From positions 1 through 64,000 of the IMG/VR virus record IMGVR_UViG_3300046616_000314: DNA of 64,000 bases; one strand, written 5' to 3'. The notes beneath the pieces were generated by a model. That model was not told the DNA's origin, made no database searches, and saw only the letters and a list, made by a program, of their open reading frames with translations. Below are positions 3,940-56,735 of this stretch, one piece after another. Made by a program: the position numbers and the translations under genes. The first letter of the stretch is position 1. Every line of letters starts with the position of its first letter.

Positions 3940-4016
<77 letters not shown>

Positions 4017-4033
4017 ATAATTCTTTTTACGGC

Positions 4034-4108
4034 GCGCGGTTAGCTCAGTGGTAGAGCGTCTCGTTTACACCGAGAGGGTCGGCGGTTCAAGCCCGTCACC
4101 GCGCACCA
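4034..4108 (+). tRNA. tRNA-Val(TAC)
   Basis: GCGCGGT/ACCGCGC acceptor stem, TCTCG-TT-TAC-AC-CGAGA anticodon arm, CCA. Confidence 0.95.
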
Positions 4109-4123
4109 AACATTTCAAAGCAA

Positions 4124-4462
4124 ATGACAGCAACTCTTACATTTCTGTTTAATGATACTCATATTTTCGAACCCGATTATGTTCGTGGTTGGGTTATTAG
4201 TGACGAATACGATACCACGTATCAGTACGATCCCTATAAGAAAACGCGATGTCAAGAACCCCCGATGCGGTCAGAGATCATCGAATGGCTAGATAGTCAT
4301 TACGAAGGCGAATATACTTTCGAAAAATATATGAAGCCGTTAAGCACTAAACGCTTCACACGAGAATTTGGCACGATTGAAATCATGCTGGATAAACCAT
4401 ACGGCTTGCATTGTCATTGCACTGAAGAAATGGCGATGCATTTTCGGTTGAAATTCGGATGA
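4124..4462 (+). CDS. FKLKW-family protein
   Basis: IIEWL; ends TEEMAMHFRLKFG. Confidence 0.8.
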   Translation: MTATLTFLFNDTHIFEPDYVRGWVISDEYDTTYQYDPYKKTRCQEPPMRSEIIEWLDSHYEGEYTFEKYMKPLSTKRFTREFGTIEIMLDKPYGLHCHCTEEMAMHFRLKFG

Positions 4463-4776
4463 CTGGATTTCCTTATGTAGTCGAATACGCGGACTATGCC
4501 CGACAGCACACCGGGTCTTTCCGTATAGAACAGTGTTATCCAATTCATGAATGGTTAGAAGCAAATTATCCTGAGTTGGAATGCGCGTATCATGGCGCCG
4601 GTGGATGGTATGAAAAATACAAGAATTGCCCCGGTAAAAATGCAATTTGTCCCGATAAAGATTTTAGAATTGATATCCTCTATAATCCAAAATACATGGG
4701 CGATACGCGAGATACTTGCCTTGTGAGTTTCAAGGACGAACAGGTTGCCATGCATTTTAAACTAAAATTTGGTTGA
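4459..4776 (+). CDS. FKLKW-family protein
   Basis: IHEWL; ends FKDEQVAMHFKLKFG; ATGA overlap. Confidence 0.85.
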   Translation: MTGFPYVVEYADYARQHTGSFRIEQCYPIHEWLEANYPELECAYHGAGGWYEKYKNCPGKNAICPDKDFRIDILYNPKYMGDTRDTCLVSFKDEQVAMHFKLKFG

Positions 4777-4801
4777 CACGCTCTAGTTCTCAGACTAAGG
4801 T
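4773..4801 (+). promoter_or_regulatory. sigma70-like promoter
   Basis: TTGACA-N17-TAAGGT; the same hexamers occur at 57126-57154. Confidence 0.6.
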
Positions 4802-4932
4802 GTTGTCAGCTAGGGAGTTGAAAGTAATGGGTGTGGGCAACTGCACTTTGCTCCAAGAGGATGAGGGCACACCGGGAGCCCAAATTTCTCCATGGCGGTG
4901 GCGCCGCTAAAGAAGTTTTGAAGACGTAACGT

Positions 4933-5007
4933 GGTGGTATAGCTCAGCGGTAGAGCGTCACACTCATAATGTGAATGTCGGTAGTTCAAGTCTACCTACC
5001 ACTACCA
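4933..5007 (+). tRNA. tRNA with CAT anticodon (elongator Met or Ile2)
   Basis: TCACA-CT-CAT-AA-TGTGA anticodon arm, no initiator GGG/CCC pairs, CCA. Confidence 0.9.
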
Positions 5008-5017
5008 ACGTCTTCAT

Positions 5018-5093
5018 GCTGGGGTAGCTCAGATGGTAGAGCATCGGATTGAAAATCCGAGTGTCACTGGTTCGATCCCAGTTCCTAGCACCA
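5018..5093 (+). tRNA. tRNA-Phe(GAA)
   Basis: TCGGA-TT-GAA-AA-TCCGA anticodon arm, CCA. Confidence 0.95.
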
Positions 5094-5111
5094 ATTTTTC
5101 TGCGAGTGACG

Positions 5112-5330
5112 ATGAGAACCATTGTATTTCGTACCCAGGCTGAACGCATTAAGTTGGCGAATTCAGTCTTGGAAATCGGTAGAGACAAGGTGTTCCAACG
5201 TCAAGTGCGTACGTGGATGCATAAGCGTTTATCGCATCCCGCGTGGTTCTCATTTAGTCGTCAATGGGGCGATATGTTGTGTTTCGCCACGGAAGAAGAC
5301 GCCGCACTCTTCAAGTTGAAATGGCTATGA
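5112..5330 (+). CDS. FKLKW-family small protein
   Basis: VRTWM; ends FATEEDAALFKLKWL; start placed after the tRNA. Confidence 0.85.
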   Translation: MRTIVFRTQAERIKLANSVLEIGRDKVFQRQVRTWMHKRLSHPAWFSFSRQWGDMLCFATEEDAALFKLKWL

Positions 5331-5653
5331 AAAACTACGACCGCAATGCCAGATTGATGTACGATCCCACTCAGTTGAAGGGGTATCGTATTACCCCGGA
5401 TGGGAAGGGGATCGAAGTCAATCGTTTCGGTCTTCGCTACAGTGAATCTTTTGCCATATCAGGCATCCCCCGCGTGGGGCACACAAACGATTTGGTCGTG
5501 ACCAAGCGGCGCCTTCGCGATGATTCTATTGAAGTCTGGGAATGGATGGAGCGCGTAGGCATCGACATTCATTTGTCAGGCGGTCATGGGGCTCACGTTC
5601 TTGTCGGACTGTCCGATGACGATTTCGCTCTGTTCAAGCTCAAGTGGCTCTGA
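5327..5653 (+). CDS. FKLKW-family protein
   Basis: ATGA overlap; VWEWM; ends LSDDDFALFKLKWL. Confidence 0.85.
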   Translation: MKNYDRNARLMYDPTQLKGYRITPDGKGIEVNRFGLRYSESFAISGIPRVGHTNDLVVTKRRLRDDSIEVWEWMERVGIDIHLSGGHGAHVLVGLSDDDFALFKLKWL

Positions 5654-5943
5654 TGCTCGACGCAGTTAGGTTCACTGAGACCGGGGTGATGCTATCCGTC
5701 CCTCGTTCAGAAATGCGATCTGAGTTTCGCTTGGGCTTGCTGCTGTTCATGAAAACTCGTAGCACGCTCATGCGTATCCTTTCTGGGTCGAATGCCCAGT
5801 TCATGTATTTTCTTGAAAAGAATAATATTGAATACGTCATCGGCAACACAGAGCGGTGTAGCATCACCGACTGTTGTTACGTGCCTCTTCATTTCGAAAA
5901 TGTAGATGATCTTGTTTTTGTGAAGATGAAGTTTACCCGATGA
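5644..5943 (+). CDS. FKLKW-family protein
   Basis: Ends FENVDDLVFVKMKFTR; alternative start 5653. Confidence 0.75.
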   Translation: MALMLDAVRFTETGVMLSVPRSEMRSEFRLGLLLFMKTRSTLMRILSGSNAQFMYFLEKNNIEYVIGNTERCSITDCCYVPLHFENVDDLVFVKMKFTR

Positions 5944-6245
5944 GTTATGATCGCGATCAGCCACTCTATTTCGAGGATGAAAGCTGTCATTATTACCGTA
6001 ATGAGGCTGGTAAAGAAATTCAGCTTTATTATGTTGGGTTCAGAATTTCGACAGCCCGATATTACGAACGGCATCGAGCCGGAATGATAGTCGATATCGA
6101 AGACGTTGACACACGGGCTGTCCCGGCATTCTTGTGGTTACAGGAACGCGGTCATCTTAAAACTATTCATGCATTCCGGGGACCGCATATTCTGGTCGAT
6201 CTGGAACTAGACGAATATGTGGAATTCAAACTGAAATTTAAATAA
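5940..6245 (+). CDS. FKLKW-family protein
   Basis: GPHILVDLELDEYVEFKLKFK, resembling the 5327 gene. Confidence 0.8.
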   Translation: MSYDRDQPLYFEDESCHYYRNEAGKEIQLYYVGFRISTARYYERHRAGMIVDIEDVDTRAVPAFLWLQERGHLKTIHAFRGPHILVDLELDEYVEFKLKFK

Positions 6246-6246
6246 C

Positions 6247-6326
6247 GCCACGATAGCTCAGATTTTTGGTAGAGCGTCGGATTGAAAACCCGAAGGTCAC
6301 TGGTTCGATTCCAGTTCGTGGCACCA
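6247..6326 (+). tRNA. tRNA-Phe(GAA), second atypical copy
   Basis: GCCACGA/TCGTGGC acceptor stem, enlarged D-loop (AGATTTTTGGTA), A-C mismatch in the anticodon stem, CCA. Confidence 0.85.
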
Positions 6327-6339
6327 ACCTTGAGATTAT

Positions 6340-6720
6340 ATGTACCACCCCGACTATCATTGTGCGCCATACGCTAAACGCCCGCACCACAATCTAACCA
6401 TGATGACGACTCATCTATGGGACGATTACGATGCCCTGGAATCTAAGAATATGGGCTATCACCCTGCGGTACTGAATGATCAAAAGGCTCGTCTAGCATA
6501 TTTCATGGTCAAGCCTAAATTTATTACGCATCTACCCAACATGGGATCGTTAGATTTCTATCATACTCCGTTCGAAGACATCGATGACTATATCAAACGG
6601 TTGGAACGTTACGAAATCTTCGTAAGACGTTTGCATATTCTGCCAGATGGTATGTTGCTGGCACATGATCATGATGACATGAACGATCAATTCTTAGTTT
6701 TCAAACTGCTAGCCAAATAG
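6340..6720 (+). CDS. divergent FKLKW-family protein
   Basis: Ends DMNDQFLVFKLLAK. Confidence 0.65.
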   Translation: MYHPDYHCAPYAKRPHHNLTMMTTHLWDDYDALESKNMGYHPAVLNDQKARLAYFMVKPKFITHLPNMGSLDFYHTPFEDIDDYIKRLERYEIFVRRLHILPDGMLLAHDHDDMNDQFLVFKLLAK

Positions 6721-6723
6721 AAA

Positions 6724-6750
6724 AAGCCCCGGCTATCTATTCCGGGGCTT
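6724..6750. terminator. intrinsic terminator between convergent genes
   Basis: AAGCCCCGG-loop-CCGGGGCTT hairpin with an A-run on the left (U-tract on the minus strand). Confidence 0.7.
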
Positions 6751-6774
6751 CCTCTGATTGCTGGGATACCTAGA

Positions 6775-6996
6775 TCAAACGGCTTCAGCCGGATCGGTGT
6801 TCCCGTCTTCGATCAGTTTCTTTTGCTCGTTGATCCAGTCGTTGACGACGATGCGAGCCGAGTCGATGTCGGCAAACGATGTCGTACAAGAGATTTCTTC
6901 AAGATCGTGAAGGTTGCGCAAATGGCGTTCAGCTTCATTGATCATATGTTCGCGCGGAAACCCCGCGCTGATTAGTTCGTTCCACGTTTCAATCAT
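6775..6996 (-). CDS. hypothetical protein
   Basis: 73 aa ORF with GGGAGA SD. Confidence 0.7.
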   Translation of the reverse strand: MIETWNELISAGFPREHMINEAERHLRNLHDLEEISCTTSFADIDSARIVVNDWINEQKKLIEDGNTDPAEAV

Positions 6997-7062
6997 CGAA
7001 AATCTCCCTTGAATATATTTTGGTTAGAGTATATAATTTATCAAAATACGTCAAGGTTTTCG

Positions 7063-7473
7063 ATGCGCAAGATTGAAAAGATAACATACTTGGATACTTG
7101 GATTGGTACTTGCCATTACTTGTCCAAGTGGTGTCGCAGTTCAGCCAATTCGACAACCGATGCTAAATCGTCGTATTTTACCGCGAATACCCTCGATACT
7201 ATGTTCGTCTCGCTTCTGCCCTACCCCAAACCTGCATTGTTCATGGTCGTAGAATATATTGACCTTGAGAACATGCAAGGGGGCTCCGATGCATACGAAC
7301 TCAATATCGCACAAGACCAAGAGACCGTGGCACGAGTTGAACGCCTCGGGCATCGTATGAGCTATATGGTCTCGGATGGCATGTCAGGCAAGCGTTTCTT
7401 TCTTGCGGCGTTTCAATTTCACCCTGGCGAACTAGACGAATTTGAAATGGGATTTAGAATATTATGGAAGTAG
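7063..7473 (+). CDS. divergent FKLKW-family protein
   Basis: Ends ELDEFEMGFRILWK. Confidence 0.6.
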   Translation: MRKIEKITYLDTWIGTCHYLSKWCRSSANSTTDAKSSYFTANTLDTMFVSLLPYPKPALFMVVEYIDLENMQGGSDAYELNIAQDQETVARVERLGHRMSYMVSDGMSGKRFFLAAFQFHPGELDEFEMGFRILWK

Positions 7474-7856
7474 TCGTTGATCATTGGTGGAACTATCTTG
7501 CCAAGACGCAAGAGGTAACACAGAAATTTTATAATAAGCATTCCAAAGAATCTAGGATGGCGGATGACTATCGTTCAGTTCACACACTGAACAACAAGTT
7601 GCTGCTTCGCAAAAACGACAAAGGTGAGAACTATTCTCTCGCTGAACCGCTGTATGCAATCGAGTATCAACAAGGCACTCCCTTTGCGCATTTCGATGTA
7701 GCAACGGCAAATGCTCTAGTGGAACGTTTTGGAAGGCTCGGGATCAAGTCTTATCCGATCCACGTGGCAAACTATCGGTTGGTCATCGGAACCCGCCAAT
7801 CTGTAGACCTTTCCGAACTTTCTGTTATTGCGCATTTGGCGTTCAAAAATCAGTAG
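7464..7856 (+). CDS. hypothetical protein, probable paralog of the 7063 gene
   Basis: Start formed by the W codon of the upstream gene; shares VER(F/L)-x-RLG. Confidence 0.65.
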   Translation: MEVVVDHWWNYLAKTQEVTQKFYNKHSKESRMADDYRSVHTLNNKLLLRKNDKGENYSLAEPLYAIEYQQGTPFAHFDVATANALVERFGRLGIKSYPIHVANYRLVIGTRQSVDLSELSVIAHLAFKNQ

Positions 7857-7935
7857 AAAGTTCTTGCAAGATAAATAAAAGTAGGATATAAATAAAAAAT
7901 ACCAACGTTGCTTAGTAATGAGCAACACCCTCGGA

Positions 7936-8011
<76 letters not shown>

Positions 8012-8035
8012 AACCTCTTCCATTTTTCGAAATGG

Positions 8036-8110
8036 GCGTCCATAGCTCAGCGGGAGAGCATCACATTGACATTGTGAGGGTCGCAAGTTCAATCCTTGCT
8101 GGACGCACCA
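8036..8110 (+). tRNA. tRNA-Val(GAC)
   Basis: TCACA-TT-GAC-AT-TGTGA anticodon arm, CCA. Confidence 0.95.
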
Positions 8111-32443: not shown

Positions 32444-33460
32444 ATGCCATATATCGTTTTGAGATTGATAATGGCACGCCCAAATTCTCTTCCTAAGAAA
32501 CCCACTCTTTCCAAGCTGACCGATGAAGAACAAATCGCTATCGCGGCGATTCGCTTCAATCCTGCGCTGTTCAAGAAAATCAAGAACCCGACGCAGGCTG
32601 TCTTGGAATATGGGTTGGATTCCTATCCGCAATTGATCAGCAAGATTGATAAACCAACCAACGAAATGTGGCTCCGCGCCATCAAGCGTTCGGATGGTAG
32701 CGTGATCAAATATCATCCAAATCCTTCCGAAGAGTTGCAGTTCGAATCAATTCATCGTTCTCCGATGAATTTGAAGTGCATCAAGGATCACACTCCGCTC
32801 GTTGCCAACTTGGCTATTCGTTACAATGGCTCGGCGTGGCGATATGTGAAGGCGTGCCATAAGACGGATGAGCTTATGGAACTAGCGGCTCGCCAGTATG
32901 GGTTCCAAATACGGCATTGCAAGAACCCAACCGAGAAAACGATCATGTCGGTTTTGCGTCGTGATCCTGGGCAAATTCGTTATCTTAAGAAACCGTCGAT
33001 TAAGGCGCAATGCACGGCATTTGTGACTTCGCCATATCTCATCAATTCGTATTACCAAAACGACTATCGCGAAACGATGCCCGAAGACGTTGCGTTGGCT
33101 GTCATCCGAGAGAACGGCTTAACACACCATTTGGGTCATCGGGCGCGCAACCCGCGCTATATTGCGTATGCCAGAACGACATTGACCGTCGCTCAATATA
33201 GAAAAATTGAAAACAAGATTACTGAATATAATCGCGTTTTGAAAACTTTGACTAAGCAACAATGCGATTGGTTGATTAAGACCAAGACCAAATTTCATTT
33301 AAAATATGAAGATATGTACAAAGTCGAAGTGCCCGTGTCTGCGACGGCGAAGCCATCAATTCGTCGTCGCAAACCGGCTGTACAAACTATTTCATACGCC
33401 TTGCTATTGTCATTCGACAACGCCGACGATCTCATGATGTTCACGCTCAAATTCGGCTAG
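32444..33460 (+). CDS. helical-repeat (DUF4116-like) protein fused to the C-terminal FKLKW motif
   Basis: About 23-aa repeats (AIxxNPxxIKxIKNPT); ends FDNADDLMMFTLKFG. Confidence 0.8.
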   Translation: MPYIVLRLIMARPNSLPKKPTLSKLTDEEQIAIAAIRFNPALFKKIKNPTQAVLEYGLDSYPQLISKIDKPTNEMWLRAIKRSDGSVIKYHPNPSEELQFESIHRSPMNLKCIKDHTPLVANLAIRYNGSAWRYVKACHKTDELMELAARQYGFQIRHCKNPTEKTIMSVLRRDPGQIRYLKKPSIKAQCTAFVTSPYLINSYYQNDYRETMPEDVALAVIRENGLTHHLGHRARNPRYIAYARTTLTVAQYRKIENKITEYNRVLKTLTKQQCDWLIKTKTKFHLKYEDMYKVEVPVSATAKPSIRRRKPAVQTISYALLLSFDNADDLMMFTLKFG

Positions 33461-33910
33461 GTCTCGCATCATATCGCGATGACCCTGGCGACGTGCCGCA
33501 ACACGCATCCGACGCTTTGCGTGTTGCGCGGCATGGACGCGCTGTCGATAGCACGTGCCATTCCGGCGAACCATGTGATGAACTTTTTCCCACATATAAT
33601 GTAGGTCTGCGCCATCGGAATCGTAGTCGGGATTCCACTCGTAGCGGACCTTCTTGACCATCGCCGGGTAATACTCGTAGCGATAGGCTTCCTCATGGTC
33701 GCCTTCACAATTCCGAAAGACGTATGGGACTTTACGATATTTTTCTCCCATTTCCTCGTACTCAATGCGGAAGCGTACCGGTTCGGGAACTGGTGGCTTG
33801 GGAAGTTTTAGATAGTTGTAATCGGATAATTTGAAACGCCCGTCCTTGGCTTTTGCACAATGGGCATGATTATTGCGATGAAGAATCAATTTACGAATGG
33901 TGCGAGACAC
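33410..33910 (-). CDS. basic hypothetical protein (MSRTIRK...)
   Basis: GTG start with GAGGGAG SD. Confidence 0.7.
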   Translation of the reverse strand: MSRTIRKLILHRNNHAHCAKAKDGRFKLSDYNYLKLPKPPVPEPVRFRIEYEEMGEKYRKVPYVFRNCEGDHEEAYRYEYYPAMVKKVRYEWNPDYDSDGADLHYMWEKVHHMVRRNGTCYRQRVHAAQHAKRRMRVAARRQGHRDMMRDLAEFEREHHEIVGVVE

Positions 33911-34423
33911 AGGTTCTCTCCCTCTCAAAAGGTTGCGGTTAGGTCATGGGGATGCCTTTCTAAAACCATGCGGTTTTAGTGCGCGTGAACGTTCGTCATA
34001 AAGCTAATTGCAGTGGCAATAGCTGCGATACGTTCCTATGAGAGAAGGTATAACTGCACCATAATGTCGTACATACGACCAATTATATGTGTCTTGTAAG
34101 CCTTCTTAATATGAAACACTGAGTAAAGTATGTGTTTCGAATCTCATACTACCATCGAACGAATTTTTGTCAAGAAATTTTAGTTCATTAACGAATATGG
34201 TTGAGAAATCGTTAAAATCGTATTCGTAACCTTAATGTCGCAAAAAAATTTACACTCGCTTAACCAGCGAAAAACCCAAGTGAGACGGGGGTTTTTGCCT
34301 CCTCTACGTTCAAATGTGGCGATAGCGTGGTAAAAAAATGATCAGATCATGCTTGACTAATGGCTAACGACCGGTGTTATCTCCGCTCCACCGACTGGGA
34401 CGTTTGGGGACTGGAAAAAACAC

Positions 34424-34900
34424 ATGAAAATCAAGCTCGCACTTATTGGTGCGCTAAGCCTAGCACTTGCCGGGATCGCACATGCCGAGACCGAAAAGAG
34501 TGCTTGGCAATTTCGCACTCCCGCTGAAACTTCTGTAGCGCAAAACAGCGTTGTTTTGATGCAGCAGAAGCAGAACGACTACTACAAGATGTACAAGAAT
34601 GGCGGCTCTGGCGTCATTGGCGGCGGAAGTGGTCTGTTCGGTTCGTCAACTTCGGCGACCAACAACTTCACGCAAATCGTCAACCAGAACACCACCAACA
34701 ACAACTGTTCTGCAACGGGCGCCGGATCGGCTCTGACGTGTGGTTCGTCTTCTACCAATACGAACAACGTCAATCAGACGACCACGGACTCGACCGCTGA
34801 TGCGAACAACACCATCACCGGTAACACCATCACGAACCAGCCCTCGACCACGACGAATTCGGGCAACACCGGTTCGACGGTAACTGGGGGCAACCAATGA
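34424..34900 (+). CDS. secreted N/T/S/G-rich HfaA/curlin-like protein
   Basis: Signal peptide ending AHA; GSSTSATNNFTQIVNQ...NSGN low-complexity region; first gene of the operon before the CsgG/HfaB homolog. Confidence 0.65.
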   Translation: MKIKLALIGALSLALAGIAHAETEKSAWQFRTPAETSVAQNSVVLMQQKQNDYYKMYKNGGSGVIGGGSGLFGSSTSATNNFTQIVNQNTTNNNCSATGAGSALTCGSSSTNTNNVNQTTTDSTADANNTITGNTITNQPSTTTNSGNTGSTVTGGNQ

Positions 34901-35889
34901 ACAAGCGTAACCTTTTCCTGACCGTCGCTCTTATGATGTCGATGGCAATTCCTGCCGTGGCTTCCGCCGGAAGCAAGAAGGCAGTCAACCCGATGAACCC
35001 ACGCAATGCGATGGTTCTGGGATCGGCGCCGGAAAACAACGTGACCGCGACTCAAAACGGTTTCGTCTGTTTCGCCAACTACCTCGCCAAGGACCCGCGC
35101 CGCCCGGTCTTCTCGGTTGGTCGCCTGCGCGATGACTCGGGAAAGTTTTCGAATTTCGCCAATGAGCCGGGTTCGGCTGGCGGCTACGAAATGACCCAAG
35201 GTCTGTCCAACATGGTCTATACGGCTCTGGGCAAGCTGGCTCCTGACTTCGCCATCGTTGAGCGCACGGATACCGCAATCGTGGACTCCGAAATCTCGCT
35301 CGCCAAGGAAAGCCTGTTGGGCGATCCTTCGGAGCAAGGCACGTGGGCTGTCGATAAGAACGGGCAAAAGATTTTGCTCGGCAAAGGTCTTCGGTCCTTG
35401 ACCGGCGGTCAATTCCAGGGTGTTGATTACTACATCACTGGTGCGATCACCGAAATCAACTACAACATTTCGTCGGGCGGCGCCCAACTCAAGGTTCAAG
35501 GGATCGGCGGCGGCAATCGCGTCTATTCCATGAGCATTGCGATGGACCTTCGCATCGTGGATGCCCGCACGCTCCGCGTGGTCAAGACCGTCTCTGAACG
35601 GAAGAAGATCAGCGGTAATGAAACCGAATTTGGTGTCTTTAATTTCCTCGGAGATTATCTGATCGACATCAATGCGGGTCGTAAGCTTCAAGAGCCCATT
35701 CAACTGGGCGTGCGAGCGACTATGGAATCAGCCCTACTCAAGTTGGTCGGGGCTGCATATGGCACGAATTACGGGGAAACTTGTAGCTCGTATGCCGCCA
35801 CTACCTACGGTCAAGTTGTGCCTGTCACGACTCCCGTAGCCGACAACACGGCTGATCCCATCGCGGATAAGCTGTCGGCGTCGAAGTAA
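34897..35889 (+). CDS. hfaB: CsgG/HfaB-family secretion pore protein
   Basis: VGRLRDDSGK, TQG..MVYTALGK, IVERTD, DYYITGAITEINYN, MDLRIVDARTL and EPIQLGVRA motifs. Confidence 0.85.
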   Translation: MNKRNLFLTVALMMSMAIPAVASAGSKKAVNPMNPRNAMVLGSAPENNVTATQNGFVCFANYLAKDPRRPVFSVGRLRDDSGKFSNFANEPGSAGGYEMTQGLSNMVYTALGKLAPDFAIVERTDTAIVDSEISLAKESLLGDPSEQGTWAVDKNGQKILLGKGLRSLTGGQFQGVDYYITGAITEINYNISSGGAQLKVQGIGGGNRVYSMSIAMDLRIVDARTLRVVKTVSERKKISGNETEFGVFNFLGDYLIDINAGRKLQEPIQLGVRATMESALLKLVGAAYGTNYGETCSSYAATTYGQVVPVTTPVADNTADPIADKLSASK

Positions 35890-35947
35890 GACGTACCCTT
35901 TAAAAAGCACGGGCATTCCGCTCGGCATAGGAAAGAGACCCTACAAT

Positions 35948-36811
35948 ATGCGTAATCTTCTCATCGCGGCTTCTGCCGTAGCTCTGTTCGCTGGCATCGC
36001 TACTCAAGCTTCGGCTACGGGCGACTCCTACGGCGTCCAACTGAACCTGGGCACCCTGCAACTGGGTCAGTCGAACGTTCATCGCACGTCGGTTGGCGGC
36101 AAGCTGAACCTCTCGACCGCCGCTGTCGGCACCAACCTGTCGGTCCTGTCGGACATCCCGGCGACGACTGACCACACCAGCAACAGCGGTCGTACCAACG
36201 GCGACGCTCGCGTGGCTTCTCTGCAAGTCAACGCCCTGACCGCCCAAATCGCGACCACCAGCGTCACTCGTTCGTCGGTCGGCGCCGATCTGACCACCAG
36301 CACGCAAGCCATCGGCAACGCTGTTGATGTCGAATCGACCCACAACTACGTGTCGAACGGCTACGTCACCAGCAACACCGATTTCGACAAGTCGATCAGC
36401 CTGCAAGCCAACGTCGGCGCCGTGCAACTCGCCACCACCGACATCGCCCGCGTTTCGGTCGGTGACGATCTGGACGTGAGCACCATCGCTGTCGGCAACA
36501 CTTCGTCGTTCTTCGGCGCCAAGGGCGTTGCGGCTGCGACCGGTCAACTGAACCTGGGTACGGTGCAACTGGCTTCGACCGACTTCACTCGCTCGTCGGT
36601 CGCTGACAACGCTTCGTTCTCGACTTCGGCTTTCGGCAACGTGGCGTCGTACACCGGCAACACCGTCGATCCGCTGACCGTCCAAGTCAACGCTCTGACC
36701 ATCCAAGGCGCCAGCACCAACATCGGTCGCTCGTCCTTCGGCGGTAACGTTTCGGTCGATACCTCGGCGGTCGGTAACGCGATCACCGTCTCGACCAACC
36801 TGAACAACTAA
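35948..36811 (+). CDS. secreted beta-repeat HfaD-like protein
   Basis: Signal peptide; five ~38-aa repeats Q-x-N-x4-Q-x-A...R-x-S-[VF]...S-T-x-A-x-G-N. Confidence 0.75.
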   Translation: MRNLLIAASAVALFAGIATQASATGDSYGVQLNLGTLQLGQSNVHRTSVGGKLNLSTAAVGTNLSVLSDIPATTDHTSNSGRTNGDARVASLQVNALTAQIATTSVTRSSVGADLTTSTQAIGNAVDVESTHNYVSNGYVTSNTDFDKSISLQANVGAVQLATTDIARVSVGDDLDVSTIAVGNTSSFFGAKGVAAATGQLNLGTVQLASTDFTRSSVADNASFSTSAFGNVASYTGNTVDPLTVQVNALTIQGASTNIGRSSFGGNVSVDTSAVGNAITVSTNLNN

Positions 36812-36841
36812 GACCCACACCCAGCCGGTTTGAGTTGTGAG

Positions 36842-36877
36842 AAGAGGGTAGGGGAGAAATCTCCTACCCTCTTTTTT
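36842..36877 (+). terminator. intrinsic terminator of the hfa-like operon
   Basis: AAGAGGGTAGG...CCTACCCTCTT followed by a T-run. Confidence 0.8.
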
Positions 36878-37511
36878 ATTTGCCGTACCGAAGTTTGAAT
36901 TCGATGATGTCATCTTCATTTGAAAAATAAAATACGATCTCGGCTTTTGCATCATCCCTACCGGGATCATCCCATTCAGAAATCGACCAGTAGCCGTTGT
37001 GTGGTTTCTGAATTTCTTTGCGCTTCAGAAGCCGACAATCTTTGACTGTCAGCATCAGCGACACCGGAGAGAACTTGTGACTCGCTGCACGGGCGAAGGT
37101 CACTTCCTCATCGAAGGGCACGAACAGGGTCCTAGGATCGAACCAGAAGCCCTCGGAATTGTGCCAGGGTAGTCCGTTGTCAAAACGGCTCTCCCTAAGC
37201 TGACGGAGGTTCCTACGCACGTTGTGGACTACGGATACGCGGCTGTACATCAGATCATGGACCTGCCGGGCGTTATACATTTGCTTGAGGCGAATGCGAA
37301 TCTGTTCGAAGGTAAAGAACCGGACGGCGGTCATGTGCCGGTTGTTGCTCATCCGGTACAGCCATTGCGCGGCATTCTTATCGCGCTTGTAAGCCCGTGT
37401 GACGGGGTTATCGCAGTGGTGGTGCTGGTTGAACGCGGCGATGCTTTCCGCCTTGCGTGCAGCCTTGGAGGCTCGCCAATCGATGATCTCTTGATATTGA
37501 TGACGTGCCAT
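36876..37511 (-). CDS. long FKLKW-family protein
   Basis: NGYWS...FSNEDDIIEFKLRYG; own TTGACA promoter near 37567. Confidence 0.8.
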   Translation of the reverse strand: MARHQYQEIIDWRASKAARKAESIAAFNQHHHCDNPVTRAYKRDKNAAQWLYRMSNNRHMTAVRFFTFEQIRIRLKQMYNARQVHDLMYSRVSVVHNVRRNLRQLRESRFDNGLPWHNSEGFWFDPRTLFVPFDEEVTFARAASHKFSPVSLMLTVKDCRLLKRKEIQKPHNGYWSISEWDDPGRDDAKAEIVFYFSNEDDIIEFKLRYGK

Positions 37512-38564: not shown

Positions 38565-39389
38565 ATGACCGCGACCATCAATGTTTTCAGTATGCCTCAA
38601 GTTGTGACTATGACGTTCGCACCCACGTACGGAGACGGCTTAATGAACTACCCAGTGAATCGGACGGATTTCACAGTACCGAAGGGTCTCACGACCGAAA
38701 TTCATTTCTTCGTCAAAGACGTTGATCGCCGCGCAGTCAACTTAGCAAATTCGAACGCTGTTCCTACCGCCGTCATCGTAGACACGCATCGCCAAAAAAC
38801 GCTTCTAGAGCGCGACATGGACCTTATCAACCCGACCAAGGGTTTGTACATGCTGACCCTGGAACCTAGCGATGTTGTGGATTGGCCACTAGGTCAATTG
38901 GAGTATAGCGTGATCGTAGAGCGCGAAAACGGTACTAAGGTCTTCCTCTACACAGATCGCGATTATGGTCCCTACAGTGCCCTCAAGGTCGTTCACGGAC
39001 CCTATGCGACGCCCAAGGAAGCCATTGAAATTCCGGCTGATCAATTCACGCCGCAATCATTTAATTATATGAACCAGTTTCCCGAATACATTGCTGGCGC
39101 GTTCCAGGGCGCGGCGCAAGTGGGCAACATCAGTGGTATGCAAAGTGCCGTGTTCCACATGACCGGTTTCATCGGCAATCTGTTGATCCAAGGCTCTTTG
39201 GAAGATCAACCTAGCTCCAACGATTCAGATTGGTTCAACGTCAACACCGCGACATTTTCGGAACCGACTGATGGACCGATCTACATGGATGCTATCGGTA
39301 ACTTGGTGTGGGTTCGTTTCCTAGTTCAAGTTTTGGGCTTCGATACATTCGCTAATACTTTCCAAGGTGTTACTTACCGAAACGATTGA
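38565..39389 (+). CDS. virion structural protein (baseplate/Ig-like)
   Basis: TAAATA upstream; beta-rich, GxLLIQGSL...WFNV...WVRF. Confidence 0.65.
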   Translation: MTATINVFSMPQVVTMTFAPTYGDGLMNYPVNRTDFTVPKGLTTEIHFFVKDVDRRAVNLANSNAVPTAVIVDTHRQKTLLERDMDLINPTKGLYMLTLEPSDVVDWPLGQLEYSVIVERENGTKVFLYTDRDYGPYSALKVVHGPYATPKEAIEIPADQFTPQSFNYMNQFPEYIAGAFQGAAQVGNISGMQSAVFHMTGFIGNLLIQGSLEDQPSSNDSDWFNVNTATFSEPTDGPIYMDAIGNLVWVRFLVQVLGFDTFANTFQGVTYRND

Positions 39390-52784: not shown

Positions 52785-54668
52785 ATGCGCCACTTAGAGA
52801 TTTTTGAAAAACGTCGTAACCCAACTCTTAACAAGAAAGAGCATGTGCTTGATGTCTTGAAACAATACAAGGGGCGCCAAGATATTTTTGTCAGTTTTAC
52901 ATCTGACGTGGGCAACCTATCGCATCCATTCAGAGCCGATGCATACACGTATGATGACGAAGATTCCATTGGGGCTCCTGTAGCACACGGTTTGAAGTCC
53001 AAGGGCGAACGTCATAATACAAAAGGCGCAAAGATTGGTATCAATCCGAAGAGTGAATTCCACACACCGCTAGGTATCTATACCTATCCTGTCGATTATG
53101 TAATCAATCACCAAATGGAAGTTCCTTACGCGGGTGGCAAACCTTACATTCACGTGCTTCAGGCGCGCGGTAATATTCTCAATCTGTCCACATACGATGG
53201 TGGACAATACGAAGCTGACCTGAAGAAACTTCACAAGATCGGTTGGTTAGACGAAACCACAACAGAATTTGTTATCACACGCGCTGCTGGCGATGCACGC
53301 GATGATGGTCCAGCCTCCAAGATTTGGAACATCACACGCATTTATTCCGACACGTTTGTAACGAACGAAGAGAAGCAAGCTCTGGCGTTTCCGGGTGCAA
53401 GTGACGCAGAAAATTTCATCTATCGTATGATCAAAAACAATTGGGAAACCAAAGTAACTGGTTTTCATGTTTATGATCCTGATGAAATTACTATGCCTAA
53501 AGCCGAGCGAGCATTAGACGATCTGAATAAAGAATACGAAGATACGGTAGTTGGTGATCAATTAAAGCGCGTTACTGCTGAAATGGTCTTCAAGGCATGG
53601 AAGCATTACGCCGAATTTTATCACGAAAAAATCAAGACACCGAAGCGTAAGAGCATGGTTCAGTGGGCTAAGCTATTGCGTCTCCTGGGATATGATGGCG
53701 CGGTTGATTTCGAAGACGATGGTAACATTCACCCTTCGGAACCCACTCAAGCGGTGTTCTTCACTAAGAATGCGATCAAAGAAATCGAATTGTTGCACAA
53801 CAACAAGAAGATGAGACCAGAACCGAAGACCCAAATGCAAATCTGGGGCGATAAACCTGCAATCTTCAAGAACATGGTTGCACAAGGTAAGGTCTCGATT
53901 GCCGATATGAAAGACTATATTGATCAGGTTCCTATTGTCATGAAGTCAATTGACTACACAACCTTGCCTCATGAAGTTCAAGACATGCTGGATATGAACC
54001 CATTCCGTTATCCGATTGGTAGTGTTCCTTTTACGGCTGATCAATTATTTGATCACATTGATGAACAACACTCAAAGCATTACTACGATCCATATTCTGT
54101 TATTTCGGCTATTCCAGAAAAATATTGGGAAGACCCAAATTTTAGTGGTGCATTTATGAAACGGCTGTTGCGCGACCCGGTTCAGTATCAACGTTTCTAC
54201 AAGACTGTGTTGCAATACAAAGTTCCAGATAAAGTGCTGATCAAGTATGTGAAGACAACACACCCGGATTTCATTCAATATTTGTCGGATGAGAACAAGG
54301 TAGAGCTTCTTCATGCTGCGCGAGATCATGCGGGTAAGTATGCTACCCTTTCTCAATACGTTCCGAATAGTTTGTTGCTGTATAGAGTATCATTGCAAGG
54401 CATTTCTCTTGAGAAATTGCAAAATATTATTCGAGCCACAACAAAACTAGCTCCCGATGCGATGAAAATGAACACCGCAAACGAAGTTGGGCTTATGATT
54501 AGAGCCGTGAATACTCTAACATTCGAGCAATTGGAACACCTATTCCATTGGGCAGAAAGCCCCGAAGCGGACATCAAATTCGTGCCTGAGATCAAATATG
54601 AGATCGCAGATGCCATGCATCGCCGCTTCCCCAAAGAATACACAGAGCGTTCCGATCTGCATGTATAA
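52785..54668 (+). CDS. large late protein with ART-like domain (polyvalent-protein type)
   Basis: MRHLEIFE leader; PLGIYTYP...GYDGAVD...SEPTQAVFF; TAAATA 5 nt upstream. Confidence 0.55.
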   Translation: MRHLEIFEKRRNPTLNKKEHVLDVLKQYKGRQDIFVSFTSDVGNLSHPFRADAYTYDDEDSIGAPVAHGLKSKGERHNTKGAKIGINPKSEFHTPLGIYTYPVDYVINHQMEVPYAGGKPYIHVLQARGNILNLSTYDGGQYEADLKKLHKIGWLDETTTEFVITRAAGDARDDGPASKIWNITRIYSDTFVTNEEKQALAFPGASDAENFIYRMIKNNWETKVTGFHVYDPDEITMPKAERALDDLNKEYEDTVVGDQLKRVTAEMVFKAWKHYAEFYHEKIKTPKRKSMVQWAKLLRLLGYDGAVDFEDDGNIHPSEPTQAVFFTKNAIKEIELLHNNKKMRPEPKTQMQIWGDKPAIFKNMVAQGKVSIADMKDYIDQVPIVMKSIDYTTLPHEVQDMLDMNPFRYPIGSVPFTADQLFDHIDEQHSKHYYDPYSVISAIPEKYWEDPNFSGAFMKRLLRDPVQYQRFYKTVLQYKVPDKVLIKYVKTTHPDFIQYLSDENKVELLHAARDHAGKYATLSQYVPNSLLLYRVSLQGISLEKLQNIIRATTKLAPDAMKMNTANEVGLMIRAVNTLTFEQLEHLFHWAESPEADIKFVPEIKYEIADAMHRRFPKEYTERSDLHV

Positions 54669-54995: not shown

Positions 54996-56735
54996 ATGAC
55001 AAAGAAAGTCAATGAAAGCGTTGCTTTCTTAATTGAAAGCGAACTTGAAAAGATGCAAGTCGTGCTTGCTGTTAAGAGCATCGCTGACAAGCTACAAGAC
55101 ATCGCGAAGACCCTCGCCAAGATCGAAGTCGATGACATCATGCCTATCCTCGATAGTATGCGTGTTGAATTCGGTCCTGAAGTTGCTGATCACTTCAACG
55201 AAGCGACCACAAGCAAGATTCGCGAAACCACAGAAGCCATTCAGGCTGCTAAGAACGCCATCACCACCGAAGCTGAACGCCTGGAATCGGGCGCACCCGT
55301 GAACGATATGTCCATGGATAGCGGCATGGGCGATGACGACATGGCTTCGATGGGTGATGAAACTGGTATGGAAGACCCGGCTATGGCTGGTGGCGACGAC
55401 ACCATTGCTCCCGATGCTGCTATGGGCGACGACATGGGCATGGGCGGCGAAGACGATCTGGACGCTGGCTTTGAAGACCCGGCTGCATCTGGTGCGGCTC
55501 AAGGTCGTGCTCGCAAGGAAAGCATTGCCTATTCGGCAAAGGCTCTGCGCGAATCTTCGAACCCTGACCAACTGGTTTATCAAGCATTCTTCGCTAAGCT
55601 GAAGGAAAGCAAGTCGGCTGCTACGGCTGTCAAGGCTGTTGCCGAAGCTTTCTCCATCGACGCCATTGACGTTGTTGAAATCGTCCAAGAGGGTAACACT
55701 TGGAAGGATAACTTCGAAAAGGGTAAGAAGGACAAGCTAGACAAGCGTTCTAAGGATCGTGCCGATTCGAAGAAGAAGAAAGAAATCGAAGAAGGCAAGT
55801 CACACAAGAAGAACGACGAAGATAGCGAAGACAAGTTCGCTAAGTTCAAGAAGCGTTCTGCCGAGCGTGACGCCAAGCCGAAGAAGGTTGAAGAGACTGC
55901 CGCTGTAAAGCTGGCGCCTCACGCCAAGACTGCTGGCAACGTTGCAAAGCCGAAGGTTGTTGGTAAAGTAAAGCCGAAAGCGTCTTTTAAGACCGGCGGC
56001 ACTACGGGTAAGCCGAGTAGTGCAGTCACTAAGACAGTGAAGGAAGACTTCGGAATGCGTGGCGTTCCGAAGTCTGACGCAACCCAGAGCCTTAGCCAAT
56101 TTCAGGTTAAGGTTCTGGATATGCCTACTGTCCAAGACGCTAAAGAACGTGCAAGAGCCGATTATTCGGAGAAGCGCGGTCGCACAATCCAAGTTCCGTA
56201 TTTGTTTGTTTTGAATTCGGAGCAAAATGGTGAGCAATACAATTCACGCGCGGCTGATCCGTTCGTTGTTCGTATTGAGCCTACCGATGATCATTTCTTG
56301 ACTGGTATTTGGGACGGTAACGTTCTGACCCCGCGTTGGAAGATCGTTGTGAAGGATGGCAAGGGTATCGTCCCCGCCAATGCTCGTATTGCCTGGATTG
56401 ATGCCCGTGGTTATCGCGTTCAGAAAAAGCCTAAGCTAGGTGAAGATCATAACGTTGTTGGTATTCTACCTGCGCAATTGGATCGTGCCATCGAAGCCGG
56501 TGATATCGAAACCGCGAAGCGTTTGTTGAATAAAGTGCTTACGGATATCGAAAAAGACCCGGAATCGCGTACCGCGACGATTGCTATGCTGGTTAAGTTG
56601 ATGACCAATGAGAAAAACAAAGGCATCAAGGAAGCCATGGTTGACTATCTAAGCAACGCCGAAAAGCGTTCTGAGAAAGCCAAGGCGGCTCGTGCTGCTA
56701 AAGGTTTCACCGCCATGGATCAGAAAAAGAAGTAA
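54996..56735 (+). CDS. prohead scaffold/core-like protein
   Basis: Coiled-coil N-terminus, D/M/G-rich linker and repeated xES/xEG/xED sites. Confidence 0.7.
   Translation: MTKKVNESVAFLIESELEKMQVVLAVKSIADKLQDIAKTLAKIEVDDIMPILDSMRVEFGPEVADHFNEATTSKIRETTEAIQAAKNAITTEAERLESGAPVNDMSMDSGMGDDDMASMGDETGMEDPAMAGGDDTIAPDAAMGDDMGMGGEDDLDAGFEDPAASGAAQGRARKESIAYSAKALRESSNPDQLVYQAFFAKLKESKSAATAVKAVAEAFSIDAIDVVEIVQEGNTWKDNFEKGKKDKLDKRSKDRADSKKKKEIEEGKSHKKNDEDSEDKFAKFKKRSAERDAKPKKVEETAAVKLAPHAKTAGNVAKPKVVGKVKPKASFKTGGTTGKPSSAVTKTVKEDFGMRGVPKSDATQSLSQFQVKVLDMPTVQDAKERARADYSEKRGRTIQVPYLFVLNSEQNGEQYNSRAADPFVVRIEPTDDHFLTGIWDGNVLTPRWKIVVKDGKGIVPANARIAWIDARGYRVQKKPKLGEDHNVVGILPAQLDRAIEAGDIETAKRLLNKVLTDIEKDPESRTATIAMLVKLMTNEKNKGIKEAMVDYLSNAEKRSEKAKAARAAKGFTAMDQKKK

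What the first reader, a model, noticed from the sequence alone, without database searches (positions are those of the whole stretch)
34424..36877. Complete phage-encoded holdfast-anchor (hfaA-hfaB-hfaD-like) / curli-type secretion operon
Seen: a promoter, a secreted N/T/G-rich protein, a coupled CsgG/HfaB pore and a secreted five-repeat beta protein, then a terminator. Established: Caulobacterales hfaABD has this order and anchors the holdfast through an amyloid-like HfaA/HfaD complex exported by HfaB. csgG/csgF-like genes occur in some marine myophages, but I do not know of a full hfa-type operon in a phage. Inference: the phage remodels adhesion or the surface of the infected cell (attachment, holdfast shedding, aggregation of new hosts, or receptor masking).
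Basis: partly seen in the sequence, partly recalled or inferred. Interest (0 to 1): 0.85.

Follow-up and report, generated by a model that had tools for sequence, protein, structure and literature searches.

The report
Phage-borne curli/holdfast-type secretion cassette
A 561-kb uncultivated phage carries a self-contained three-gene unit (an outer-membrane CsgG/HfaB-type channel plus two secreted proteins, one folded like the Caulobacter holdfast anchor HfaD); the same unit turns out to be conserved in several other large phages, so it probably builds a fibre or adhesive layer on infected cells and is not a true holdfast operon.

Summary
The three + strand genes, their signal peptides, the ATGA overlap, the five repeats and the terminator are real. 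The promoter is not verified.

- **p2 (34897-35889)** is a CsgG/HfaB-family channel, closest to HfaB. It scores below the curated HfaB cut-off (168 vs 300 bits), lies outside the canonical HfaB clade, and lacks the lipoprotein cysteine.
- **p3 (35948-36811)** is a confident five-repeat beta-solenoid. It is remotely homologous to HfaD: a precomputed Pfam HfaD hit, hhalign probability 84%, and Caulobacter HfaD as the only probability-1.00 fold match in Swiss-Prot.
- **p1 (34424-34900)** is not HfaA. It belongs to an unannotated "WQF" family of 320 clusters that sits upstream of non-canonical HfaB-like genes.

The cassette is not unique. The same order (WQF protein, channel, HfaD-like protein) occurs in CcrColossus, CcrPW, Brevundimonas jumbo phages and other large viral contigs of 38-66% GC. 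In bacteria I found this combination in only two MAG contigs.

Best reading: a portable phage type-VIII-like secretion cassette that exports its own cargo to remodel the infected cell's surface. The biological role is inferred, not shown. I rate it a new variant of a known kind, of moderate interest.

The parts
33929..34423 (.). 495-bp intergenic region between the divergent gene 33410-33928 (-) and p1. It presumably holds the cassette's promoter, which was not identified.
   Evidence: ORF map. No convincing + strand sigma-70-like site near p1. TTGACT at 34353 has a poor -10. No recurrent motif.
34424..34900 (+). p1: a 158-aa secreted protein of the unannotated 'WQF' family. It has a signal peptide (cleavage after AHA21), a conserved N-terminal module (E-x-x-x-W28-Q-F-R-T-P, then a helix at about 33-50 ending in YY), and a disordered N/T/S/G-rich tail with a Cys pair (C95 invariant). 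It is the positional equivalent of hfaA, not a homologue.
   Evidence: alignment A3: W28, Q29 and F30 nearly invariant or invariant, C95 invariant. (AF2 pLDDT 50; only residues ~31-50 reach about 80). (320 clusters). (no HfaA, CsgF or CsgA match).
34897..35889 (+). p2: a 330-aa CsgG/HfaB-family outer-membrane channel. Translation is coupled to p1 (ATGA overlap). It has a plain signal peptide (ASA|GSKKA) with no lipobox cysteine.
   Evidence: Pfam CsgG 6e-19. NCBIfam HfaB 2.3e-49, 168 bits against a cut-off of 300. phrog_20175 1.6e-52. hhalign to E. coli CsgG 98.4%. Tree. Lipobox survey.
35948..36811 (+). p3: a 287-aa secreted HfaD-like protein. Five repeats of about 40-60 residues (Q-x-N ... 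Q-x-A-x-T ... G ... S/T-x-A-V/I-G-N) form a beta-solenoid.
   Evidence: Repeats. AF2 pLDDT 81.6, pTM 0.80. Precomputed Pfam PF27277 = HfaD. hhalign to canonical HfaD 84%, E 7e-6, reversed control 0.1%. Foldseek match to Q45977 HfaD at probability 1.00. VIA-align top hit is the CsgA fibril, Z 9.3.
36839..36881 (+). Intrinsic terminator: a 17-bp stem, GAAA loop and U-run, between the cassette and the convergent gene 36876-37511 (-).
   Evidence: dG -27.8 kcal/mol, z -5.99.

Best explanation
This is a self-contained, horizontally mobile, phage-borne type-VIII-like (CsgG/HfaB-family) secretion cassette with its own cargo.

Proposed mechanism:
1. All three products enter the periplasm through Sec.
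2. p2 oligomerises into a CsgG-fold channel in the host outer membrane.
3. p1 (WQF family) and p3 (HfaD-like, curlin-like beta-solenoid) leave through or at this channel.
4. They assemble into a stable, probably amyloid-like fibre or adhesive layer on the infected cell.
5. Net effect: the phage changes the surface of its host during infection. Candidate roles are adhesion or aggregation that keeps the infected cell next to fresh hosts, or a coat that blocks or traps other phages.

What is shown: the gene content, the family and fold assignments, the signal peptides, the coupling, the operon boundaries, and conservation of the triad across unrelated large phages.

What is inferred: export of p1 and p3 through p2, fibre formation, and the benefit to the phage.

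Its architecture (WQF protein + channel + HfaD-like protein) differs from both the Caulobacterales hfaABD operon and the common bacterial two-gene WQF+channel module.
For: - Channel: Pfam CsgG, NCBIfam HfaB, and hhalign to E. coli CsgG at 98.4%.
- Cargo: p3 is a confident beta-solenoid. Its only probability-1.00 fold match among 550,129 Swiss-Prot models is C. vibrioides HfaD, and its top Foldseek-independent PDB match is the CsgA curli fibril (Z 9.3). Profile homology to canonical HfaD is 84% against 0.1% for the reversed control.
- p1 and p3 both have signal peptides.
- Published work shows that HfaB is needed for surface localisation of HfaA and HfaD, and that these form SDS-resistant multimers (PMC6707917; bioRxiv 10.1101/2022.07.20.500906).
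- Unit character: ATGA coupling, opposite-strand neighbours and a strong terminator; GC 57% against 48% and GC3 65-77% against 44-60% for other window genes.
- Selection on the triad: the same three families in the same order occur in every viral locus examined (window, L094/L008, L009, L095, L097, CcrColossus; CcrPW and Kabachok), spanning 38-66% GC. L099 and L100 show the same three-gene layout by gene size and order.
- Strict positional partnership in bacteria: 44 of 48 non-canonical channels have a WQF gene upstream, and 28 of 30 canonical ones have HfaA and HfaD.
Against: - There is no expression, localisation or phenotype data. No RNA run holds the sequence.
- p2's clade lacks the lipid anchor that CsgG and HfaB carry, so outer-membrane insertion is not assured.
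- p3 misses the curated HfaD cut-off: no NCBIfam hit at E<=1.
- Foldseek against the PDB gives nothing significant.
- The CsgA match has rmsd 7.9 A, and a best Z of 7-8 is common by chance for this tool.
- p1 has no characterised relative, and its model is mostly low-confidence.
- The host is unknown.
Confidence: 0.6

Rival explanations
1. It is a true holdfast-anchor operon. The phage supplies functional HfaA/HfaB/HfaD equivalents that plug into a Caulobacterales host's holdfast machinery, either to keep the holdfast attached or, in dominant-negative fashion, to shed it.
For: - The gene order matches hfaA-hfaB-hfaD.
- p2's best named model is HfaB, and p3 matches HfaD by fold and profile.
- Cultured carriers infect Caulobacter and Brevundimonas.
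- The closest cellular p2 homologue (57%) is in a Caulobacteraceae MAG, next to a giant glycosyltransferase/deacetylase gene.
Against: - p1 is not HfaA.
- p2 scores 168 bits against a cut-off of 300, lies outside the canonical clade and has no lipobox.
- p3 gets no NCBIfam HfaD hit.
- The cassette also occurs in viral contigs of 38-40% GC, which is unlike Caulobacterales hosts.
- The window itself is 48% GC.
- The host is unknown.
Confidence: 0.15
2. It is an outer-membrane pore used for lysis timing or permeabilisation, as proposed for the csgGF genes of Melnitz and the pelagimyophages. On this reading p1 and p3 are accessories or regulators of the pore, not fibre subunits.
For: - There is published speculation for phage CsgG (PMC9004378).
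- p2's clade lost lipidation, which suggests altered behaviour.
- p1's N-terminal motif resembles the CsgF segment that sits in the CsgG lumen.
Against: - The cassette always includes a large repeat protein with the fold of a secreted anchor or fibre subunit.
- It is a stand-alone unit with no lysis genes recognised beside it.
- Bacterial relatives with the same triad are chromosomal.
Confidence: 0.1
3. p1 and p3 are virion parts (for example beta-helical fibres), and the similarity to secretion systems is incidental.
For: - Beta-helical tailspikes appear among the weaker fold matches.
- Proteins with weak matches to PHROG virion structural protein families are encoded at 38565-39389 and 54996-56735.
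Against: - All three proteins carry Sec signal peptides.
- There is obligate pairing with a CsgG-family channel in phages and in bacteria.
- The cassette has its own terminator and opposite-strand neighbours.
- There is no PHROG structural hit for p1 or p3.
Confidence: 0.03
4. It is an assembly chimera or bacterial contamination inside the viral contig.
For: The cassette has higher GC and GC3 than its neighbours.
Against: - A second assembler gives one 63.8-kb contig across both junctions at even depth with no differences.
- Isolated, fully sequenced phages carry the same cassette.
Confidence: 0.01

Closest known systems
Caulobacterales holdfast anchor operon hfaA-hfaB-hfaD (C. crescentus; NCBIfam NF037934/5/6; Pfam HfaD PF27277)
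   Same: - Same order: small secreted protein, CsgG-like channel, large secreted repeat protein.
- p2's best named model is HfaB.
- p3 shares fold and remote sequence homology with HfaD.
   Different: - p1 is unrelated to HfaA.
- p2 is below the equivalog cut-off, lies in a separate clade and is not a lipoprotein.
- p3 is shorter (five repeats) and below the curated cut-off.
- It is carried by phages, including low-GC ones.
The same cassette in published phages: CcrColossus gp241-243, CcrPW gp250-252, and Brevundimonas phage Kabachok 01660-01640 with its relatives (Dolichocephalovirinae)
   Same: - All three families are in the same order, followed by a terminator.
- p1 matches at E 3e-19 and 1e-23, p2 at 44% identity, p3 at E 5e-5 and 3e-10.
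   Different: - The phage lineage is different: the window's DnaB-like helicase has its best phage-collection matches in Atu_ph07 and Phosso, not in Dolichocephalovirinae.
- In the database records only the middle gene is named (CsgG-like / hfaB / curli assembly), and the flanking genes are 'hypothetical' or 'putative lipoprotein'.
- Kabachok's channel keeps a lipobox; the window's does not.
- I found no paper describing the triad.
Enterobacterial curli type VIII secretion (CsgG channel, CsgF adaptor, CsgA/CsgB fibre)
   Same: - CsgG fold (98.4%).
- The secreted solenoid's top PDB match is the CsgA fibril.
- p1 begins with WQFRTP + helix + YYK, resembling FQFRNP ... SYK at the mature N-terminus of CsgF.
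   Different: - There is no significant sequence homology of p1 to CsgF, or of p3 to CsgA/B.
- There is no CsgE, CsgC or CsgD.
- The channel is not lipidated.
- The repeat unit of p3 is about twice as long as a curlin repeat.
csgG/csgF genes of marine myophages (pelagimyophages, Methylophilales phage Melnitz)
   Same: A phage-encoded CsgG-family channel of unknown role. Proposed roles are 'sibling capture' or lysis timing (PMC9004378).
   Different: - Those phages carry only the pore genes and no fibre-subunit genes. Here two secreted candidate substrates always accompany the channel.
- p2 is of HfaB type, not CsgG type.
Bacterial two-gene modules: WQF protein + HfaB-like lipoprotein (Sphingomonadales, Burkholderiales, Rhodospirillales, Thiotrichaceae and others). 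Uncharacterised.
   Same: The same p1 family lies directly upstream of the channel in 44 of 48 loci.
   Different: - No HfaD-like gene follows in any of the 37 loci with enough sequence.
- The channels are lipoproteins, often 450-480 aa long.

Membership tests
Holdfast anchor HfaB (NCBIfam NF037935, equivalog) | Score at or above the curated cut-off (300 bits) | tested here: not met
   168 bits, E 2.3e-49. Brevundimonas HfaB scores 424.5 bits.
Holdfast anchor HfaB | Placement inside the canonical Caulobacterales HfaB clade | tested here: not met
   In a quick ML tree rooted on CsgG, p2 sits in a separate clade (SH-aLRT 100) with phage-like contigs and one MAG. The canonical clade (99) is elsewhere. 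The careful tree search did not finish.
Holdfast anchor HfaB / CsgG | Lipoprotein: lipobox with Cys at the end of the signal peptide (HfaB is described as a lipoprotein) | tested here: not met
   There is no Cys in the first 57 residues, and the ORF start is the first possible start. All 12 members of p2's clade lack a lipobox. The canonical HfaB and CsgG sequences examined have one.
Holdfast anchor HfaA (NCBIfam NF037934; Pfam PF27294) | Sequence match of the upstream small protein to HfaA | tested here: not met
   - No hit at E<=1.
- 0 of 37 p1-family members hit at E<=0.01.
- hhalign of the mature families gives probability 0.3%.
- The only trace is a language-model similarity of 0.78 at rank 21, which the tool rates as a lead only.
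Holdfast anchor HfaD (NCBIfam NF037936; Pfam PF27277) | Sequence and fold match of the downstream protein to HfaD | tested here: inconclusive
   - Curated NCBIfam cut-off (100 bits) not met: no hit at E<=1.
- A precomputed Pfam HfaD hit is on record.
- hhalign gives 84% with E 7e-6, against 0.1% for the reversed control.
- Foldseek gives probability 1.00 and TM 0.47/0.44 to Q45977.
- Conclusion: a remote member of the HfaD superfamily, not an equivalog.
hfa operon | Order: small secreted protein, channel, large secreted protein, on one strand | tested here: met
hfa operon | Anchors a polar holdfast polysaccharide; the host has hfs genes | not testable with these tools
   The host is unknown. 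Carriers with 38-40% GC argue against a general link.
CsgG family (Pfam PF03783), type VIII secretion channel | Domain match above the gathering score; profile match to E. coli CsgG | tested here: met
   68.6 bits against a cut-off of 20.8. hhalign 98.4% over 196 columns.
Curli system | CsgF adaptor (Pfam PF10614) | tested here: not met
   - No Pfam hit for p1 or for 36 relatives.
- The p1 profile finds no CsgF among 177,635 PDB sequences.
- hhalign aligns only the 12-column motif, P 0.042.
Curli system | Curlin-repeat subunit (CsgA/CsgB) | tested here: inconclusive
   There is no sequence match. The top structural match is the CsgA fibril 8enq_A at Z 9.3 but rmsd 7.9 A. By Foldseek it ranks 24th with E 2.1.
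Amyloid-like anchor or fibre proteins | SDS/heat-resistant multimers, dye binding | not testable with these tools
   This needs biochemistry.

The most novel reading that the evidence does not exclude
The WQF protein (p1) is the functional counterpart of CsgF, not of HfaA or CsgA. On this reading its conserved mature N-terminus (W-Q-F-R-T-P followed by a helix) docks inside the barrel of HfaB-like channels, and its disordered N/T/S/G-rich, Cys-bridged tail nucleates or tethers the HfaD-like solenoid outside the cell.

The phage triad would then be a minimal, portable type VIII secretion system (channel + adaptor + fibre subunit). Large phages would move it between very different hosts to build an amyloid-like coat on infected cells.

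It would also predict that canonical HfaA, which starts with a similar x-Q-F-Q motif, works the same way.
Probability: 0.2. Interest if true: 0.75.

Novelty: new variant of a known kind. Interest (0 to 1): 0.58.

Why it matters
Phage-encoded CsgG-type pores have been a puzzle because the marine examples lack any fibre subunit. Here the channel always travels with two secreted candidate substrates. The triad is conserved in large phages of very different hosts, and one of them, CcrColossus, infects the genetically tractable Caulobacter crescentus. That makes it directly testable whether phages build an extracellular fibre or anchor on infected cells, and what they gain from it (adhesion, aggregation, or exclusion of rival phages).

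The work also defines an unannotated protein family (WQF) as the regular partner of non-canonical HfaB-like channels in many Proteobacteria. It separates three architectures of hfa-like loci, which bears on how HfaA/HfaD-type anchors are exported.

Tried and rejected
1. **Near-identical phage in GenBank:** none by megablast. A large window protein (52785-54665) has no tblastn match either.
2. **p1 = HfaA:** rejected. The first hhalign score came from the signal peptides, and it vanished once they were stripped.
3. **p1 = CsgF homologue:**
   - BLASTP gives E 0.003 with three collinear motifs.
   - The p1 profile against all PDB sequences finds no CsgF.
   - hhalign of the mature sequences aligns only 12 columns, P 0.042.
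   - There is no Pfam CsgF hit in the family.
   - I keep this only as a speculative functional analogy.
4. **p3 or p1 = curlin repeats by sequence:** no.
5. **Foldseek of p3 against the PDB:** nothing significant. The top hit is FapC at E 1.8e-3 and probability 0.18.
6. **p1 structure:** low confidence, so no fold search was made.
7. **Word-indexed homologue search for p1:** no hits.
8. **HfaE-like fourth gene:** the fourth ORFs of related cassettes are heterogeneous, show none of the published HfaE motifs to the eye, and have no counterpart in the window.
9. **Promoter:** no consensus site and no recurrent motif.
10. **Expression evidence:** no RNA run holds the sequence.
11. **Functional clues from neighbours:** no informative domains.
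12. **Careful ML tree:** did not finish in the time allowed, so the quick tree was used.
Full report
**What is in the sequence**

The three + strand ORFs are as described: p1 34424-34900 (158 aa), p2 34897-35889 (330 aa) and p3 35948-36811 (287 aa).

- Each begins with a hydrophobic segment ending in an AxA cleavage site (read).
- The p1 stop and the p2 start overlap as ATGA.
- p1 is rich in T, N, G and S and has two cysteines.
- p3 has no cysteine and consists of five repeats, each ending in A-[VIF]-G-[NT].
- A 17-bp hairpin with a U-run follows at 36839-36881: dG -27.8 kcal/mol, z -6.0.
- The neighbours on both sides are on the opposite strand, so this is a stand-alone unit.
- Its GC content is 57% against 48% for the window. 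GC3 is 65-77% against 44-60% for other genes.

**Genome context**

- The window has six tRNA genes, two helicases, a primase, a metallophosphoesterase and weak matches to PHROG virion structural protein families.
- It is part of IMG/VR contig UViG_3300046616_000314, 561,116 bp.
- The DnaB-like helicase is 52% identical to that of Agrobacterium phage Atu_ph07 and 45% to Sinorhizobium phage Phosso. No near-identical phage is in GenBank.
- The sample is a rhizosphere metagenome, and near-identical short pieces occur in three freshwater runs.
- A second assembler's 63.8-kb contig crosses both cassette junctions without a difference, so a chimera is unlikely.

**The channel (p2)**

- It matches Pfam CsgG (6e-19), NCBIfam HfaB (2.3e-49) much better than NCBIfam CsgG (3e-9), and phrog_20175. 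Its family aligns to E. coli CsgG at 98.4% probability.
- It is not a canonical HfaB. It scores 168 bits against a cut-off of 300, where Brevundimonas HfaB scores 424.
- In a quick ML tree rooted on CsgG it falls in a separate, well-supported clade with phage-like contigs and one Caulobacteraceae MAG.
- All 12 members of that clade, and CcrColossus gp242, lack the lipobox. In its place is an AxA site followed by a basic SKKAP-like motif.
- Canonical HfaB, the large Sphingomonadales/Burkholderiales clade, Thiothrix and CsgG all have a lipobox.

**The repeat protein (p3)**

- The local Pfam, NCBIfam and PHROG scans give nothing. However, the protein carries a precomputed hit to PF27277, which is Pfam HfaD.
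- Its phage homologues hit NCBIfam HfaD weakly, at 1.5e-5 and 1.3e-7.
- A profile of the phage family hits the ORF directly downstream of hfaB in about 25 Brevundimonas loci.
- hhalign to canonical HfaD gives 84% and E 7e-6 over 248 columns, against 0.1% for the reversed control.
- AlphaFold gives a confident all-beta solenoid: pLDDT 81.6, pTM 0.80.
- Its only probability-1.00 match in Swiss-Prot models is C. vibrioides HfaD.
- Foldseek against the PDB is not significant; FapC is first.
- A Foldseek-independent search puts the E. coli CsgA fibril first at Z 9.3, the only hit at Z >= 8, but with rmsd 7.9 A.
- Conclusion: p3 is a remote HfaD relative with a curlin-like solenoid architecture.

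**The small protein (p1)**

- It matches no family library. The word-indexed search finds nothing.
- It is clearly homologous to the gene upstream of the channel in CcrColossus (3e-19) and Kabachok (1e-23).
- A family profile hits the ORF directly upstream of HfaB-like genes in many non-Caulobacterales bacteria.
- The family is defined by a mature N-terminus G-E-N-x-x-W-Q-F-x-T, a helix ending in G-Y-Y, an invariant N-C, and a variable N/S/T/G-rich tail.
- An exhaustive search finds only 320 representative clusters. None of 37 diverse members hits HfaA or CsgF.
- With signal peptides removed, hhalign against canonical HfaA gives probability 0.3%.
- Conclusion: p1 occupies hfaA's position but is not HfaA.

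A resemblance to the mature N-terminus of CsgF caught my eye: WQFRTP against FQFRNP, then a helix and YYK against SYK. The FQF phenylalanines of CsgF contact the CsgG lumen (PMC7304575). But profile tests do not support homology, so I keep it only as a hypothesis about function.

**Distribution**

The cassette is not unique.

- tblastn finds the channel in CcrColossus, CcrPW and five Brevundimonas jumbo phages, with the two flanking families present.
- IMG/VR adds a 499.6-kb contig, a 229.5-kb contig and a 61.5-kb contig.
- Assemblies add L009 (contigs of about 125 kb and 32 kb shown), L099 (114.6 kb) and L100 (15.3 kb).
- Every viral locus tested with the three profiles has WQF protein, channel and HfaD-like protein in that order, across 38-66% GC. 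L099 and L100 show the same layout by gene size and order.

Partner genes across the 80 bacterial loci:

| Channel group | Loci | Upstream partner | Downstream partner |
|---|---|---|---|
| Canonical HfaB clade | 30 | HfaA in 28 | HfaD in 28 |
| Other bacterial HfaB-like | 48 | WQF gene in 44 | HfaD-like in 0 of 37 with enough sequence |
| L011 (Caulobacteraceae MAG) and L012 (Stellaceae MAG) | 2 | WQF gene | HfaD-like |

L011 lies next to a giant glycosyltransferase/deacetylase/GH18 gene. The phage triad is therefore a third architecture.

**Literature**

- HfaB is required for surface localisation of HfaA and HfaD, which form SDS-resistant multimers.
- Marine myophages carry csgG and csgF but no fibre genes. 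Their roles are only speculated: sibling capture, or lysis timing.
- I found no paper describing the phage triad. In GenBank only the middle gene is named.

**Interpretation**

- The molecular identities (channel, HfaD-like solenoid, Sec-exported partners, single operon) are well supported.
- Export through p2, polymer formation and the benefit to the phage are inferred from the Hfa and curli paradigms and from conservation of the triad.
- Carriage by low-GC phages, together with the failed HfaA and HfaB criteria, argues against a holdfast-specific function.
- I rate this a new variant of a known kind. It is moderately interesting, mainly because it can be tested in Caulobacter with CcrColossus.

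Noticed in passing
window 3940-8110: Six tRNA genes on the + strand in three pairs: Pro-TGG/Val-TAC, Met-CAT/Phe-GAA, Ala-TGC/Val-GAC.
   Followed up: no
window 32444-33460 (+) and 36876-37511 (-): The two genes that bracket the cassette region end in a similar C-terminal motif (F-x-N-x-D-D-[LI]-x-x-F-x-L-[KR]-[FY]-G; BLASTP E 0.002). The first has a weak DUF4116 hit. They may be a paralogous phage gene family of unknown function.
   Followed up: partly
loci L013-L058 (e.g. L028 3400-5314): An uncharacterised two-gene module, WQF protein + HfaB-like lipoprotein (often 450-480 aa), is widespread in Sphingomonadales, Burkholderiales, Rhodospirillales, Rhodobacterales and Thiotrichaceae. No HfaD-like gene follows it.
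   Followed up: partly
L005 1-8961 / L011 (Caulobacteraceae MAG): The closest cellular relative of the cassette has two HfaD-like genes flanking the WQF and channel genes. It lies directly downstream of a 1145-aa protein that combines GH18, polysaccharide deacetylase and GT2 domains, which suggests a polysaccharide-adhesin locus.
   Followed up: no
L009 9506-10730, L100 6187-8055, L002 693-1277: A UPF0114 membrane-protein gene lies within a few kb of the cassette in three phage contigs or genomes; in L009 and L100 an NT5C-like gene is next to it. This could be shared synteny or a functional link.
   Followed up: no
L009 8309-8680 and L011 6542-6967: A small secreted two-Cys protein follows the HfaD-like gene in one phage contig and in the Caulobacteraceae MAG (27% identity, E 2e-4). 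It shows none of the published HfaE motifs to the eye and is absent from the window.
   Followed up: partly
L001 3402-4247 (CcrPW gp251): The GenBank product name 'putative transcription activator protein hfaB' looks like a legacy name. The protein is a CsgG/HfaB-family channel.
   Followed up: no
window 34348-37291: Short pieces (151-271 nt), mostly 99-100% identical to the cassette and its right flank, occur at low depth in three freshwater metagenome runs from other studies. The phage or a close relative is therefore not confined to the rhizosphere sample.
   Followed up: partly
window 34255-34300: A hairpin with flanking A- and T-runs (aaaaaccc...gggggttttt) lies in the upstream intergenic region. 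It may be a terminator for transcription entering from the left.
   Followed up: no
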